A stretch of 63,863 nucleotides of DNA, filler included, from Octopus bimaculoides (GCF_001194135.2; 6 parts of 5 records of this genome joined end to end with filler, not necessarily neighbours in it), one strand, 5' to 3'; numbered from the whole stretch's first letter, positions 12,609 to 17,107 are shown. A program made the numbers and translations. Notes: generated by a model from the letters alone, not told the origin.

Positions 12609-12735
12609 CAGGGTGTCCACAAAGTCTGGCTACATGGAGTAGATAAACTCATAACATAAACAATTAAATATAACACATGATAATTTCTTAAAGCATGTGT
12701 TAATCCCCATGTACCCAGAGTTTGTGGACTCCCTG
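12609..12735. mobile_element. Tc1/mariner-type MITE
   Basis: TA|CAGGGTGTCCACAAAGTCTGG ... CCAGAGTTTGTGGACTCCCTG|TA imperfect TIRs with TA TSD; related internal fragment near 4790-4860. Confidence 0.8.
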
Positions 12736-12994
12736 TATGTATGTATATATATATATAACATAAATAATATATAAATAATATATTATATATATATATTATA
12801 TATAACGTCAATATTATATAAATAATATATTATATATATATATTATATATAACGTCANNNNNNNNNNNNNNNNNNNNNNNNNNNNNNNNNNNNNNNNNNN
12901 NNNNNNNNNNNNNNNNNNNNNNNNNNNNNNNNNNNNNNNNNNNNNNNNNNNNNNNNNNNNNNNNNNNNNNNNNNNNNNNNNNNNNNNNNNNNNN

Positions 12995-13026
<32 letters not shown>

Positions 13027-13094
13027 AATATATGCATATATCCATACATATATGTACATATCTACATCTATATGTATACATATATGCATATATG

Positions 13095-13290
13095 GGTACA
13101 GGACATCACAAAAAACGTTAAAGACAATGAGAAACGAAAACATTAAGACGAAGACAGAAAACGAACTTTTTTTAGAACAACGAAAAAAACAAAAAGAGAA
13201 ACGAGACATGCAACATAAAGAATATTTCCCTTCTTCAGTTGTCCTTGTTCCATATACTCCGCGTTTCGAAGGCAAGGACAATACGCGACT
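13095..13290 (-). mobile_element. Dispersed ~200-bp repeat carrying a permuted hammerhead, copy A
   Basis: Homologous to 19790-19972 (-), 48483-48640 (+) and, more distantly, 55870-56012 (-); ends in TA-rich microsatellite. Confidence 0.8.
13226..13289 (-). ncRNA. Putative non-circularly permuted hammerhead ribozyme (strand order C-B-A)
   Basis: GTCGCGT-A|TTGTCCTTG-CCTTC-GAAACGCGG-AGTATATGGAA-CAAGGACAA-CTGAAGA-AGGG. Stem I TTGTCCTTG/CAAGGACAA 9 bp; stem III ACGCGG/TCGCGT 6 bp; stem II (A)GGG/CTTC weak; GUA site. Confidence 0.65.
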
Positions 13291-13483
13291 TCGTTGGAAC
13301 AGTCCTTCCAGCAAAAACAAATTAATTAAATTTGGAATATTTTGCGGAAGGTGAAAGTGTAAACAAGAACAGGAGAGTGGGAACAAAACAGTGAAAGACA
13401 GTAAAAACAAGACAGAACAGTGAAAACAAACGATACATAAGTTTTGCCAAGAATTATCTTTCTCATCGCAGATCGGTGGCTAT

Positions 13484-13528
13484 CGGACGCTGACGAAGGG
13501 AAATAACCCTGAAACTCGAGTCCGTTTG
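13484..13528 (+). ncRNA. Canonical minimal type I hammerhead ribozyme
   Basis: CGGACG-CTGACGA-AGGG(AAATAA)CCCT-GAAAC(TCGA)GTC|CGTTTG: intact core, palindromic ACTCGAGT stem III, predicted cleavage after 13522. Confidence 0.85.
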
Positions 13529-13834
13529 TGCTACAGATCACGATGAGAGGGATAACTTCCCTTGGCAAAACAAACATGACACAGAAGTGTGTCGATAAGC
13601 CAGCTGGAGGAGATGTCCTCCTGGGGCTAAAAGCAACAGTAACATCCAACCCTAGGGGTCAGACACATTTAAGTGGCAATATACATCACTTTATCGGGCA
13701 GTTACTGTTAATACCTCATTTAGAGAATTAACATTGCTTGTTTTCACTTTTTCGATATCAGTGCATAATTTCACTGGAAAAAGATACATAAGTTTTGCCA
13801 AGAATTATCTTTCTCATCGCAGATCGGTGGCTAT

Positions 13835-13879
13835 CGGACGCTGACGAAGGGAAATGACCCTGAAACTCGAATCCGTTCG
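13835..13879 (+). ncRNA. Type I hammerhead, second tandem copy (G16.2-to-A change)
   Basis: CGGACG-CTGACGA-AGGG(AAATGA)CCCT-GAAAC(TCGA)ATC|CGTTCG; predicted cleavage after 13873. Confidence 0.75.
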
Positions 13880-14777
13880 TGCTACAGATCACGATGAGAG
13901 GGATAACTTCCCTTGGCAAAACAAACAGGACACAGAAGCGTGTCAATAAGCAACAGTAACATCCACCCCTAGGGGTCAGCCACATTTACGTGGCAATATA
14001 CTTCACTTTATATATATATATATGCACGCGCGCTCATACTCACACTCACACAGACTCACATACACACGCACACACAAACACACACACACATATATATGTT
14101 ATGGGTGTAGGTAAGTAGTCTACGTTTTCTGCGTGCGTACATCTACCAGCAGGCTCGCATGTGTGTTAGTATAGATTAGTGAATGAGAGTTAGGGGTGTG
14201 TATTGAAAAGGTATGTTGAGTATTATACAATACAACACTGCTTCTGCTAGAAAGAATGGTAGCCTCGATAACGTGTGACATCATTTTCTATATAATGCTC
14301 ATCTGTTATGTTCGGGTTAAAATTTCATCAACATCAAAAATATATGAATTTTCATGGGAGTTATGGCCGTTATGCAAAGTATTCTACAGGAGTGTTCTTT
14401 CTAAGAATGAGTAGGCTTCCGTGTAGCTTTGGAAAATATTCACGTATCCCTGCACAGAAAGAAAATATTTTTATAAATGTAATATGTAATAAAAACCATG
14501 CTCATAAAATCATATCGTTTTGCAGATGATATTCGAGAAGATACTAAAATTTTGTACTTAAAAATATTTTTACGCGAATATACGAAAGGAATTTGAAGAG
14601 CAGCAGATAATAATTGACGAAAACTTTTCAAATGTCAAAATGGCATATTTTTAACACAAAAATATTATAACAACTACAGCAAAAACTACAACATATATAT
14701 CAACGAAAATAGTAATTTTAGCAGCAGCAGCAGCAGCAACAACTGTAATGGTCATAGTAGTAGTAGTAGTAGTAGTT

Positions 14778-14819
<42 letters not shown>

Positions 14820-15156
14820 ACAATAATAATACCTATAATAATGATTAATAAAGATACAATATATTATACGATAAATAAATATTTAAATTAACATTTGGAA
14901 TGAGAGATTTTTTCCATCTACATACACAGAGCTACTAAAAAGGAACATGTATATAAGAATAAAACTATATAGTCATGTTCCAAGAAAGAAATAGTTTTTT
15001 TGATTTTTATTATTTTTGTAAGCTAGCAAATGAAAAAAATTATACACATCATTCTATGGCGAAAAATGATGTTCATGACTTTTCTGCATGTAATTTACAG
15101 ATATAGTTAATATTTTATAGATTATATTTTGAATCGAACACATACATATCTGTTTG

Positions 15157-15224
<68 letters not shown>

Positions 15225-15813
15225 TGTGTGTGTGTGTGTGGGCGGGGGGGAATGAAATAGCAAAAGTAACACTGGTTCTAAAAGGGTACTTGATTCTCAC
15301 TATAATTTTGAATAAAATAAAATTGAGCAATACCTCCTGTAAGAGTACATTCTTGAAAAACCCATTCATTTATTCTGCTGCATTCCATCAAATAACTATT
15401 GACTTCTAAATTAATTACAAGGTGGAAATTTTTATACGGAGTCAACTATTTGACTAAATCTCATTTTTTTTTTCGACATCAAAATAACGATAGGCAAATA
15501 TGAACTCAACAGAGTTCGAACTGAGAAAATTTGGAAATGCATTTAAAAACTACCAGGTTCCTCACCCGATCGATTTTTTCAACATAACAACTATCAAATA
15601 ATTATTGATATTAGTTGATTAAATGGAAGCCAGTCTTTGATTTGGAGATACACATACGAATGCATTTATTCAAGCATAGTTCTGGTACATGCTTTATCGC
15701 AGCTGAAAGGAAGCAAAAACAATGTATATAAATCTAAATGTCCACAAGTCGCAATGTAAATAGCTGAAAATCTATATTGTAAATGCTAGTATTATTATTA
15801 TTATTATTATTAT

Positions 15814-15855
<42 letters not shown>

Positions 15856-15857
15856 CT

Positions 15858-15919
<62 letters not shown>

Positions 15920-16598
15920 TCGCGTTCCGTAAACTATATTTTGTTTTGCAAACATTTTCATAAATATTAGAATATAGACCCATGGACAGAAAGGCATGAT
16001 GAGTTTATGTCGGAGAGTAAATATGTAAATATGGATTCAAAATAACTTGTCTCCCAAATAAGATTTCTATTGTAATATTTTGCTGATAATTGATCTCAAG
16101 AATTTATGACCATTGCGCATTACATTCTCCTCCCCTGCATAGCATTGCGTTCACACGAAGAATGATAACAAAAAAAAAAGATATCCTCACATAAAAAACA
16201 CTTCCAGTCCGTATCACGCAAACCACATATTCTTCTACGTCAAACATGTGAATAACTTACCCGCTATTTCTTAATCTTAACACTATAATCCGATGTTCCC
16301 CCAGTAAGTTGAAATTTTACACATAAGAGCAATAAGATTTCAACATTGCACGTACGTGTAGACTTCTATTACCTGGAATTCAGCGGGCAGCGACGGGTGA
16401 CTTGTGCTCTAGAATATAGATTCAAGTCTAGATTACACTAGACACACGCTATTACAATCACTCATAGCAATAGTACCAGTGCTCAGTAAAAGATATATTT
16501 CACAATCAGCATCACTATCTTCAAGATAACTTACTAAATACTACATATCAACTTCGATGAAAAGCTGTCCTTTTTCTATGTCTATACTGTGAGTATAA

Positions 16599-16647
<49 letters not shown>

Positions 16648-16696
16648 CGTGTGTGTGTGTGTCTGTGTGTGTGTGTGTGTGTATTATATATATATA

Positions 16697-16784
16697 CTAG
16701 CAGAAATACCGGCGTTGCCCGGGTTAAAGAGAATAATGAAATATAAAAACGCCGTCTAGACTACGCATCATCTTTATATAGAGA
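16697..16784 (-). mobile_element. Non-autonomous mini-Helitron
   Basis: Minus strand begins TCTCTATATAAAG and ends with GC hairpin CCCGGGCAACGCCGG followed by TATTTCTG-CTAG|T. Confidence 0.6.
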
Positions 16785-17107
16785 GTTGTATATACACACA
16801 CGCACCCAAACACACGTATATATATATGTATATCAATATAAATATATGAAAGTCAATGAAGTTTCGTAGAAGAAGGTGATCATGTACATACTTTCTTGCT
16901 GTTGTGATTATAACGCCTCATTGTAAACTATGTTCCTTGTTTTCCCTTGTGGAGCATATACAAATAGGTTTTTTGTTGCTGCCCACTCTTGAGCAGTCCA
17001 CATACAGTTGTCCATGTGAGAAGCAGGGCTCTTCCAAGAGAAGACCAGCTACAGACAGTGTTCNNNNNNNNNNNNNNNNNNNNNNNNNNNNNNNNNNNNN
17101 NNNNNNN

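What the first reader, a model, noticed from the sequence alone, without database searches (positions are those of the whole stretch)
13226..13289. Hammerhead ribozyme with non-circularly permuted (C-B-A) strand order, implying a triple-pseudoknot fold
Seen: the minus strand reads [III' GTCGCGT][A|][I' TTGTCCTTG][II' CCTTC][GAAA][III CGCGG] linker [I CAAGGACAA][CTGAAGA][II AGGG]. All core nucleotides are present; stem I has 9 perfect bp and stem III has 6 bp. Known: types I, II and III are the cyclic orders ABC, BCA and CAB of the strands CUGANGA, GAAA and NUH. CBA is not cyclic, so all three helices cross each other. Inference: the fold is sterically plausible because the distal ends of stems I and II lie side by side in the hammerhead and the ~10-nt linker can bridge stem III to stem I. 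From memory, non-circular HHR rearrangements have been reported for some eukaryotic repeats (Weinberg lab); I cannot tell whether this family is among them. Stem II is the weak point (G-U rich; GAAGG/CCTTC could mispair with G8/A9).
Basis: partly seen in the sequence, partly recalled or inferred. Interest (0 to 1): 0.9.

Follow-up and report, generated by a model that had tools for sequence, protein, structure and literature searches.

The report
Orphan reverse-order hammerhead look-alike in octopus DNA
The octopus sequence does contain every piece of a hammerhead self-cutting RNA in the rare, already published "S-G-C" order, right beside ordinary hammerhead repeats. It is a single copy with a very weak second helix and strong competing folds, so it is more likely a relic than a working ribozyme until a cleavage test says otherwise.

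Summary
The minus strand 13289-13228 reads GUCGCGUA|UUGUCCUUG-CCUUC-GAAA-CGCGG-(11 nt)-CAAGGACAA-CUGAAGA-AGGG. All hammerhead core bases are present. Stem I has 9 Watson-Crick pairs and stem III has 6 pairs.

The block order is not a new topology. It is the "type SGC" non-circular permutation described and validated by Eckert et al. 2023 (PMC10085705).

New context:
- The window is Octopus DNA.
- About 200 nt away, on the other strand, lie two tandem retrozyme-type repeats (351-nt spacing), each with a type-I hammerhead.
- The candidate's CUGAnGA block shares GGAC..CUGAnGAAGGGAAAUA with those hammerheads, so it probably descends from one.

Points against activity:
- Stem II has only 3 pairs (G-C, G.U, G.U).
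- The fourth helix needed in validated SGC ribozymes is no better than chance.
- The natural flanks encode stronger competing folds that hide stem I and the core.
- No second copy was found anywhere I could search, so covariation is untestable.

Chance alone gives about 1e-5 per window, but roughly 0.02-6 such motifs per octopus-sized genome.

My estimates are about 0.5 for an inactive or barely active relic and about 0.3 for a genuine active SGC hammerhead. The second would be the first in an animal genome.

The parts
13283..13289 (-). S block, stem III 5' strand GUCGCGU, including U16.1 at 13283
   Evidence: Read directly. It pairs with A15.1 + CGCGG (13264-13259), duplex about -7.6 kcal/mol.
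13282..13282 (-). A17, the cleavage-site nucleotide. The predicted cut is between 13282 and 13281 (GUA|U).
   Evidence: Position by analogy with hammerhead numbering. No cleavage data exist.
13273..13281 (-). S block, stem I 5' strand UUGUCCUUG
   Evidence: Nine Watson-Crick pairs with 13247-13239. Duplex about -11.5 kcal/mol.
13268..13272 (-). G block, stem II 3' strand CCUUC. Only UUC (13270-13268) pairs in the register used by validated SGC ribozymes.
   Evidence: The pairs are G-C, G.U, G.U with one extra base after A9.
13264..13267 (-). G block, conserved GAAA (G12 A13 A14 A15.1)
13259..13263 (-). G block, stem III 3' strand CGCGG
13248..13258 (-). 11-nt G-to-C linker AGUAUAUGGAA
   Evidence: Its best duplex with the 3' tail is -3.9 kcal/mol, against -4.2 +/- 1.6 for shuffled tails. 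The fourth helix of known SGC ribozymes is therefore not evident.
13239..13247 (-). C block, stem I 3' strand CAAGGACAA
13232..13238 (-). C block, conserved CUGAAGA (C3-A9)
13228..13231 (-). C block, AGGG: a bulged A followed by stem II 5' strand GGG
   Evidence: The run GAAGGGAAAUA (13233-13223) is identical to plus strand 13495-13505 in the neighbouring type-I hammerhead.
13295..13302 (-). Competing helix: CUGUUCCA pairs with UGGAACA (13252-13246), occupying the linker and the top of stem I
   Evidence: Duplex -9.7 kcal/mol. It is part of the -28.4 kcal/mol minimum-energy fold of the 107-nt context.
13216..13237 (-). Competing hairpin: UGAAGAA (13237-13231) pairs with UUCUUUA (13222-13216) and hides the CUGAAGA core
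   Evidence: -4.6 kcal/mol on its own, and present in the minimum-energy fold.
13475..13534 (+). Neighbouring canonical type-I hammerhead (repeat copy B): GGUGGCUAUCGGACG CUGACGA AGGG-AAAUAA-CCCU GAAA C-UCGA-G UC|CGUUUGUGCUAC
   Evidence: Manual reading. Rfam Hammerhead_1 RF00163 scores 15.6 bits, E = 0.16, in a 76-nt search, which is below the gathering score. The type-I descriptor also hits it.
13826..13885 (+). Second type-I hammerhead (repeat copy A), with G16.2 changed to A in the one-pair stem III
13428..14011 (+). Two tandem copies (13428-13700 and 13779-14011; 351-nt spacing, 83-96% identity) of a retrozyme-like repeat
   Evidence: The whole block 13094-14011 is flanked by (AT)n tracts.

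Best explanation
The motif is a real sequence pattern with the block order of the published type-SGC hammerhead. Most likely it is an orphan relic, inactive or only feebly active, rather than a working, conserved ribozyme.

It sits in a roughly 110-nt GC-richer island, in inverted orientation next to a two-copy array of retrozyme-type repeats that carry ordinary type-I hammerheads.

Its CUGAAGA block, with the following AGGGAAAUA, appears to be inherited from such a type-I hammerhead. Where that ancestor would carry its own stem II 3' strand and GAAA (CCCU-GAAA in the neighbouring hammerhead), this copy reads UCUU-UAUG.

Upstream pyrimidine-rich sequence happens to supply a UA cleavage triplet, a GAAA, a 9-bp partner for stem I and a 6-bp stem III. 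On paper this gives a complete S-G-C hammerhead.

Shown: the sequence, the pairings, the neighbouring hammerheads and the shared 11-16 nt. Inferred: the descent from a type-I copy and the lack of activity.
For: - Single copy. There is no other copy in the window or in 42 kb of cephalopod DNA fetched for the purpose. There are none in the metagenome or viral collections.
- Stem II has only 3 pairs, two of them wobble. Validated SGC-1, -2 and -3 have 5-6 pairs by the same count (4-5 Watson-Crick pairs read by eye).
- The helix between the G-to-C linker and the 3' tail was required for cleavage of SGC-3. Here it is no better than shuffled controls.
- The natural 107-nt context has a -28.4 kcal/mol nested fold. 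That fold keeps stem III but replaces stem I with CUGUUCCA/UGGAACA and buries the core in a hairpin.
- The C block shares GGAC(AA/G)CUGA(A/C)GAAGGGAAAUA with the neighbouring type-I hammerheads. Downstream, GUC-U-CGUUU aligns with their GUC|CGUUU.
- No plausible cargo lies downstream of the cut, only T-rich low-complexity sequence and then (AT)n and an assembly gap.
- Eckert et al. searched all RefSeq and reported rearranged hammerheads only from metatranscriptomes plus one bacterium.
Against: - A neutral relic would have to acquire a 17-nt S block complementary to two separate segments, plus a correctly placed GAAA. I estimate that at 1e-8 to 6e-6 per decayed core, which is a low figure for a single window.
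- All core positions are intact and the GUA triplet is cleavable.
- The candidate shares with SGC-1, -2 and -3 the odd single extra base after A9, followed by a G10.1-C11.1 pair.
- Natural retrozyme hammerheads with a mismatch at the base of helix II still cleave weakly.
- The island-to-retrozyme homology beyond the 16-22 nt around the core is not statistically secure (p 0.02-0.12).
- My energy comparison of a pseudoknotted fold with nested folds is crude.
Confidence: 0.5

Rival explanations
1. It is a genuine, evolved type-SGC hammerhead ribozyme of an octopus retroelement lineage related to retrozymes or Penelope-like elements. Stem III forms first as a hairpin. Its loop then pairs with the downstream CAAGGACAA (stem I) and GGG (stem II). 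The RNA cuts itself after A13282, leaving almost the whole ribozyme on the 3' product, as suits 5'-end processing.
For: - The block order, core bases, stem I and stem III all fit, and the motif is the best-scoring S-G-C match in the window.
- Chance is about 1e-5 per window.
- It lies about 200 nt from bona fide hammerhead repeats and shares its C block with them. That is natural if it belongs to the same mobile-element world.
- It has the same one-base insertion after A9 as validated SGC ribozymes.
- A minimal 64-nt construct has only a -13.9 kcal/mol nested competitor.
Against: - No second copy and no covariation.
- Stem II has 3 weak pairs.
- No fourth helix.
- The flanks favour inactive folds.
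- There is no recognisable element for it to process.
- It has no sequence kinship with the HRIMA-1 or SGC-variant families.
Confidence: 0.3
2. It is pure coincidence, unrelated to any hammerhead ancestry. A 9-bp inverted repeat between a pyrimidine tract and a purine tract happens to abut CUGAAGA, UA and GAAA.
For: - About two 9-bp inverted repeats with short loops are expected per 17 kb (my own arithmetic).
- Purine and pyrimidine tracts raise helix odds about 100-fold. Stem II pairing is automatic for GGG against UUC.
- A genome-scale search is expected to yield on the order of one such hit (plus my analytic estimate).
Against: - The 9 bases after the core (AGGGAAAUA) and GGAC before it match the neighbouring hammerheads. 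Anchored at the core, I estimate the odds of that at about 1e-5.
- Landing within 250 nt of a hammerhead array adds a further coincidence of 1e-2 to 1e-3.
Confidence: 0.12
3. The island is some other structured element, such as a regulatory hairpin or an alternative-fold RNA on either strand, or a DNA-level palindrome used in retroelement integration. Its hammerhead-like bases would then be incidental.
For: There are many mutually complementary segments in 100 nt. Inverted partial copies beside Penelope-like element arrays are described.
Against: No Rfam family matches on either strand. No tRNA-like fold was found. There are no repeats of it to suggest a functional class.
Confidence: 0.05

Closest known systems
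Type-SGC hammerhead ribozymes (HRIMA-1 motif and type-SGC variants), Eckert, Friedrich, Weinberg & Weinberg, Nucleic Acids Res 2023 (PMC10085705)
   Same: - The S-G-C block order and the mutually crossing stems I, II and III.
- All conserved core bases.
- The cleavage site predicted at the 5' end of the motif.
- One extra base between A9 and G10.1, which I read in SGC-1, -2 and -3 from the published oligos.
- Stem III of 5-6 pairs.
- A short or absent linker from stem I to stem II.
   Different: - The known ones come from metatranscriptomes, probably small circular RNAs. There are 583 sequences, with covariation and in vitro cleavage.
- This one is a single genomic copy in an animal.
- Here stem I is long and strong (9 pairs) rather than 5-6 weak pairs.
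- Stem II has 3 wobble-rich pairs rather than 4-5 Watson-Crick pairs.
- The helix joining the G-to-C linker to the 3' tail is missing.
- Stem I does not share the conserved AUGUU/AACAU sequence.
Type-I hammerheads of animal non-LTR retrozymes and Penelope-like elements (Cervera & de la Pena 2014, 2020; PMC7229834)
   Same: - The candidate is physically adjacent to two such repeats.
- Its C block shares CUGAnGA-AGGG-AAAUA with their hammerheads.
- It lies in low-GC, microsatellite-flanked sequence.
   Different: In those the order is C-G-S (type I), with a one-pair stem III capped by the palindromic loop UCGA, arranged as 351-nt tandem units. No type-I, -II or -III partner can be drawn for the candidate's core.
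Type-GCS singleton of Caballeronia peredens (same 2023 paper)
   Same: A lone, non-circularly permuted hammerhead-like sequence in a cellular genome with no covariation support. Its biological meaning is unclear even though it cleaves partially in vitro.
   Different: It has a different block order, a bacterial host and well-formed GC-rich stems.
'HHR_core' and 'HHR_half_core' remnants noted in Naiad Penelope-like elements (Craig et al. 2021, PMC8557442)
   Same: CUGANGA with a GAAA found at a distance on either side, not fitting canonical descriptors. Naiad remnants are reported in Octopus.
   Different: No helices or activity were claimed for those. I could not obtain their sequences. No Penelope-like coding remnant was seen in the window's ORFs.

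Membership tests
Type-SGC hammerhead ribozyme | Blocks in the order S (cleavage site), G (GAAA), C (CUGAnGA) on one strand | tested here: met
   the definition is.
Type-SGC hammerhead ribozyme | Conserved core: C3 U4 G5 A6 N7 G8 A9, G12 A13 A14, the A15.1-U16.1 pair, and H17 not G | tested here: met
   CUGAAGA, GAAA and GUA| are read directly.
Type-SGC hammerhead ribozyme | Stems I and III abut the core without insertions | tested here: met
   Stem I has 9 Watson-Crick pairs. Stem III is A-U plus 5 pairs.
Type-SGC hammerhead ribozyme | Stem II of about 4-6 pairs next to A9 and G12 | tested here: not met
   Only G-C, G.U, G.U with a one-base bulge, or A*C followed by 3 pairs without it. SGC-1, -2 and -3 give 5-6 pairs by the same count.
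Type-SGC hammerhead ribozyme | A helix between the G-to-C linker and the sequence 3' of stem II (needed for cleavage of SGC-3) | tested here: not met
   Best duplex -3.9 kcal/mol against -4.2 +/- 1.6 for shuffles. The requirement is described.
Type-SGC hammerhead ribozyme | A short linker (typically 3 nt) from the stem I 5' strand to the stem II 3' strand | tested here: inconclusive
   The linker is 0-2 nt if stem I is fully paired, and 3 or more nt if its top pairs open. Greedy counting gives 0-2 nt for the validated ribozymes as well.
Type-SGC hammerhead ribozyme | Covariation in stems I-III across homologues | not testable with these tools
   No homologue was found. Octopus genomes are not searchable by DNA here.
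Type-SGC hammerhead ribozyme | Site-specific self-cleavage abolished by a G5 mutation | not testable with these tools
   This needs an in vitro transcription assay.
HRIMA-1 lineage of type-SGC ribozymes | Conserved stem I sequence AUGUU/AACAU and a GGACC/GGUCC stem II | tested here: not met
   Comparison with the SGC-1 and SGC-2 oligo sequences.
Canonical hammerhead types I, II and III (Rfam RF00163, RF00008, RF02276 and others) | Cyclic block order with a nested three-way junction | tested here: not met
   No Rfam hit at E <= 10 in a 121-nt search. My scan of all six orders finds only S-G-C for this core.
Animal non-LTR retrozyme (the neighbouring repeats, not the finding itself) | Type-I hammerhead with a 1-2 bp stem III capped by a palindromic tetraloop, in tandem repeats of 150-450 bp with low GC | tested here: met
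   C-UCGA-G stem III, 351-nt spacing, two copies.

The most novel reading that the evidence does not exclude
This is the first non-circularly permuted (type-SGC) hammerhead in an animal genome, caught next to its type-I relatives. It would have evolved from a retrozyme type-I hammerhead by keeping the CUGAnGA block and recruiting a new GAAA block and cleavage-site block upstream. That would be a natural example of how a non-circular RNA permutation arises.
Probability: 0.25. Interest if true: 0.75.

Novelty: new member of a known kind. Interest (0 to 1): 0.45.

Why it matters
Non-circular permutations of a ribozyme are so far known from one study of environmental RNAs. How they arise is an open question raised by its authors. 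If this copy cleaves, three things follow:
- It would extend the permutation to an animal chromosome.
- It would tie the permutation to retrozyme or Penelope-like mobile elements.
- It would offer a concrete ancestor-descendant pair, a type-I hammerhead and an SGC hammerhead sharing one block, for studying the rearrangement.

If it does not cleave, it is a useful warning. In genomes rich in hammerhead repeats, complete-looking permuted cores can appear without function.

Tried and rejected
- **Rfam.** The gathering threshold over the whole piece, and E <= 10 around the motif, gave no hammerhead or other credible family for the motif. This is expected, because covariance models cannot represent crossing helices.
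- **Canonical readings of the same core.** There is no downstream GAAA or cleavage-site partner for type I. A type-II reading (GAAA-C-GCGGA-G-UA| at 13267-13255) fails because UAUGGAACAAGGACAA forms no stem I hairpin (sequence reading).
- **Other copies in the window.** Only a 16-nt match to the neighbouring hammerheads. A CUGAUGA site at 2893 (minus strand) looks superficially similar but was not reported by BLAST.
- **Reaching octopus paralogues through spurious ORFs.** The exact ORFs are not in the protein collection. Two homology searches found nothing.
- **DNA pattern scans.** The motif pattern gave 0 hits in the metagenome and viral collections. The neighbouring hammerhead's pattern gave 0 hits in the metagenome, viral and bacterial/archaeal genome collections.
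- This yielded two 21-kb loci (Octopus bimaculoides and Argonauta). They confirm the host through a shared SINE but contain neither the island nor the retrozyme.
- **Extended homology of the island to the retrozyme.** p is 0.02-0.12 depending on gap costs, and 2.7% of other window segments score as well, so it is not established.
- **tRNA and SINE-head search.** None found.
- **Coding potential.** Ten ORFs had no Pfam family above its cut-off. The six-frame translation of 14000-17063 looks like noise. I did not run Pfam on it.
- **Supplementary consensus sequences of Naiad Penelope-like elements.** Not held.

Full report
**1. Observation.**
On the minus strand the window reads, from 13289 to 13228: GUCGCGUA|UUGUCCUUG CCUUC GAAA CGCGG AGUAUAUGGAA CAAGGACAA CUGAAGA AGGG.
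- Stem I is nine Watson-Crick pairs flush against A17 and C3.
- Stem III is the A15.1-U16.1 pair, four G-C pairs and one G.U pair.
- My own scan for the S-G-C arrangement (CUGANGA, an upstream GAAA, then an upstream UH, with helices counted outward from the core) finds this as the only match of comparable quality in the 17-kb piece. One further hit reuses the same GAAA and core with H17 at 13387 (stem I 6, stem III 2).

**2. Is it more than chance?**
- In 40 Mb of first-order Markov sequence trained on the window, the relaxed pattern (stem I >=4, stem III >=3) occurred 42 times. A combined stem I + III length of 14 or more never occurred.
- Extrapolating at about 0.376 per extra pair, and an independent analytic estimate, give 4e-10 to 1e-9 per base-strand for stems as long as these.
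- That is about 1e-5 for this window. It amounts to roughly 0.02-6 per 2.7-Gb octopus genome (size from my own knowledge), depending on whether stem II and Watson-Crick-only pairing are demanded.
- The arms are a pyrimidine tract and a purine tract. Given their compositions, the 9-bp helix has probability 1/756, stem III 1/10, and the GGG/UUC stem II is automatic.
- The motif is unlikely for a single window. It is nevertheless the kind of hit a genome-wide descriptor search would produce about once by accident. This is why the authors of the published permutations required covariation.

**3. What the order is.**
Eckert, Friedrich, Weinberg and Weinberg (NAR 2023, PMC10085705) split the hammerhead into blocks C (CUGAnGA), G (GAAA) and S (cleavage site). 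Types I, II and III are CGS, GSC and SCG.
- They discovered type SGC (407 HRIMA-1 sequences and 176 variants). They showed cleavage at the analogous site, loss of cleavage with a G5 mutation, and disruption and rescue of four helices.
- All their rearranged examples came from metatranscriptomes, apart from one bacterial type-GCS singleton.
- A full-text search found no later paper that uses the term 'type-SGC'.

**4. Fit to the validated SGC ribozymes.**
I rebuilt SGC-1, -2 and -3 from the published oligonucleotides and ran them through the same counting.
- All three form stem II only if one extra base follows A9 (CUGAUGA-U-GG...). The candidate behaves the same way (CUGAAGA-A-GGG), giving a canonical G10.1-C11.1 pair.
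- Its stem II then continues with only two G.U pairs and stops, against 5-6 pairs by the same count in the validated RNAs (4-5 Watson-Crick pairs read by eye).
- The short or absent linker from stem I to stem II is not disqualifying. Greedy counting gives 0-2 nt for the validated ones too.
- The fourth helix joins the G-to-C linker to the tail after stem II and was essential in SGC-3. It is not present here: the best linker-tail duplex is -3.9 kcal/mol, against -4.2 +/- 1.6 for shuffled tails.

**5. Competing folds.**
- For the bare 64 nt, the nested minimum is only -13.9 kcal/mol.
- With natural flanks (107 nt), the minimum is -28.4 kcal/mol. That fold keeps stem III but pairs CUGUUCCA (13302-13295) with UGGAACA (13252-13246), taking the top of stem I. 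It also folds UGAAGAA (13237-13231) onto UUCUUUA (13222-13216), burying the catalytic core.
- The first of these helices prolongs stem III away from the core. It therefore cannot coexist with stem I in a hammerhead-shaped molecule. This is an inference from the known Y shape.
- My rough sum for the pseudoknotted active fold is stem I -11.5, stem III -7.6 and stem II about -2 to -3, plus a pseudoknot penalty. That does not beat the nested fold. The comparison is crude.

**6. Surroundings.**
- The piece is non-coding and full of microsatellites, with two assembly gaps.
- A SINE-like repeat at 9197-9586 matches three copies (68-91% identity) in a 21-kb Octopus bimaculoides locus that I fetched through a reflectin protein. 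The host is therefore an octopus.
- On the plus strand, 13428-13700 and 13779-14011 are two tandem copies (351-nt spacing) of a repeat.
- Each copy carries GGUGGCUAUCGGACG CUGACGA AGGG-AAAUAA-CCCU GAAA C-UCGA-G UC|CGUUUGUGCUAC. This is a type-I hammerhead with a 6-bp, internal-loop, 5-bp stem I and a one-pair stem III capped by a palindromic tetraloop.
- Copy A has G16.2 changed to A.
- In a 76-nt search Rfam's Hammerhead_1 aligns to copy B as I drew it (15.6 bits, E = 0.16, below the gathering score).
- This matches the animal non-LTR retrozymes of Cervera and de la Pena, which a 2026 preprint derives from Penelope-like elements.
- The whole block 13094-14011 is bracketed by (AT)n. Inverted partial copies beside such arrays are described for Penelope-like elements.

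**7. Kinship of the candidate with its neighbours.**
- The candidate's GGACAACUGAAGAAGGGAAAUA matches the neighbours' GGAC-GCUGACGAAGGGAAAUA.
- As an unanchored BLAST hit this is E = 0.08. Anchored on the shared core, nine identical bases after it that no hammerhead function requires have odds of about 1e-5 (my arithmetic).
- Where the neighbours continue CCCU GAAA C-UCGA-GUC|CGUUU, the candidate continues UCUU UAUG U-UGCAU-GUC-U-CGUUU. This looks like the same type-I hammerhead with its GAAA destroyed.
- Homology over the rest of the island is only suggestive (p 0.02-0.12).

**8. Weighing.**
Against a working ribozyme:
- It is a single copy, so covariation cannot be tested.
- Stem II is weak.
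- The fourth helix is absent.
- The flanks favour inactive folds.
- There is nothing recognisable downstream to process.
- RefSeq was searched by the discoverers without a eukaryotic report.

For a working ribozyme:
- All core positions are intact.
- Stems I and III are strong and correctly placed.
- It shares the one-base insertion after A9 with validated SGC ribozymes.
- It lies next to, and is related to, real hammerheads.
- The odds that a decayed core would acquire a co-adapted S block and G block by drift are low (1e-8 to 6e-6 per core by my estimate).

My estimates are about 0.5 for an inactive or feeble orphan built on a retrozyme relic, about 0.3 for a genuine active SGC hammerhead, about 0.12 for pure coincidence, and the remainder for something else.

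**9. Novelty and value.**
The topology is known. At best this is a new member of the kind, and the first in an animal genome. Its particular appeal is that its type-I relatives sit beside it, which would make the origin of a non-circular permutation testable. One in vitro transcription experiment and one genome-wide search would settle the question.

**10. Limits.**
- No octopus genome could be searched by DNA.
- Only about 59 kb of cephalopod sequence was examined in all.
- The energy estimates ignore pseudoknot thermodynamics.
- The null models do not capture all low-complexity structure.

Noticed in passing
window 13428-14011 (+): Two tandem retrozyme-like repeats (351-nt spacing, 83-96% identity), each with a type-I hammerhead. 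The cores are at 13490 and 13841, and the predicted cuts follow C13522 and C13873. Copy A has a G16.2-to-A change and lacks 34 nt that copy B has. Rfam misses both hammerheads at the gathering threshold.
   Followed up: yes
window 9197-9586; L001 489-729, 12047-12509, 18213-18589: A SINE-like repeat 68-91% identical to three copies within 21 kb of Octopus bimaculoides chromosome CM046601.1. This identifies the window's host as an octopus.
   Followed up: partly
SGC-1, -2 and -3 sequences in the supplement of PMC10085705: All three validated type-SGC ribozymes carry one extra base (U) between A9 of CUGAUGA and the first stem II pair. The octopus candidate has an A at the same place.
   Followed up: partly
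window 13095-13230 and 13345-13427 (-): T-rich, loosely repetitive flanks (CGUUUUC, CUGUCUU and UUUCACUG words) on both sides of the GC-richer island. Words such as TTGTTTTCACT recur in the spacer between the two retrozyme copies (13738-13748, plus strand). Their origin is unclear.
   Followed up: partly
window 7713-7824 / 7935-8046 and 4794-4859 / 12627-12692: Two further dispersed or tandem repeat pairs (76% and 88% identity) of unknown family.
   Followed up: no
window 2893-2865 (-): CUGAUGAACGGAAAAUAAUUCUUUG resembles the candidate's CUGAAGAAGGGAAAUAUUCUUUAUG, but it runs into a (GTA)n microsatellite and has no GAAA or stem partners. It is probably chance.
   Followed up: partly
window 5009-5895 and 12858-12994: Runs of N (assembly gaps). 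The second lies about 100 nt beyond the T-rich flank of the island, so anything further downstream on the minus strand is unknown.
   Followed up: no
literature: PMC8557442: Naiad Penelope-like elements, present as remnants in Octopus, are reported to carry 'HHR_half_core' cases with GAAA on either side of CUGANGA at 35-50 nt. This may be an unrecognised pool of permuted hammerheads.
   Followed up: partly
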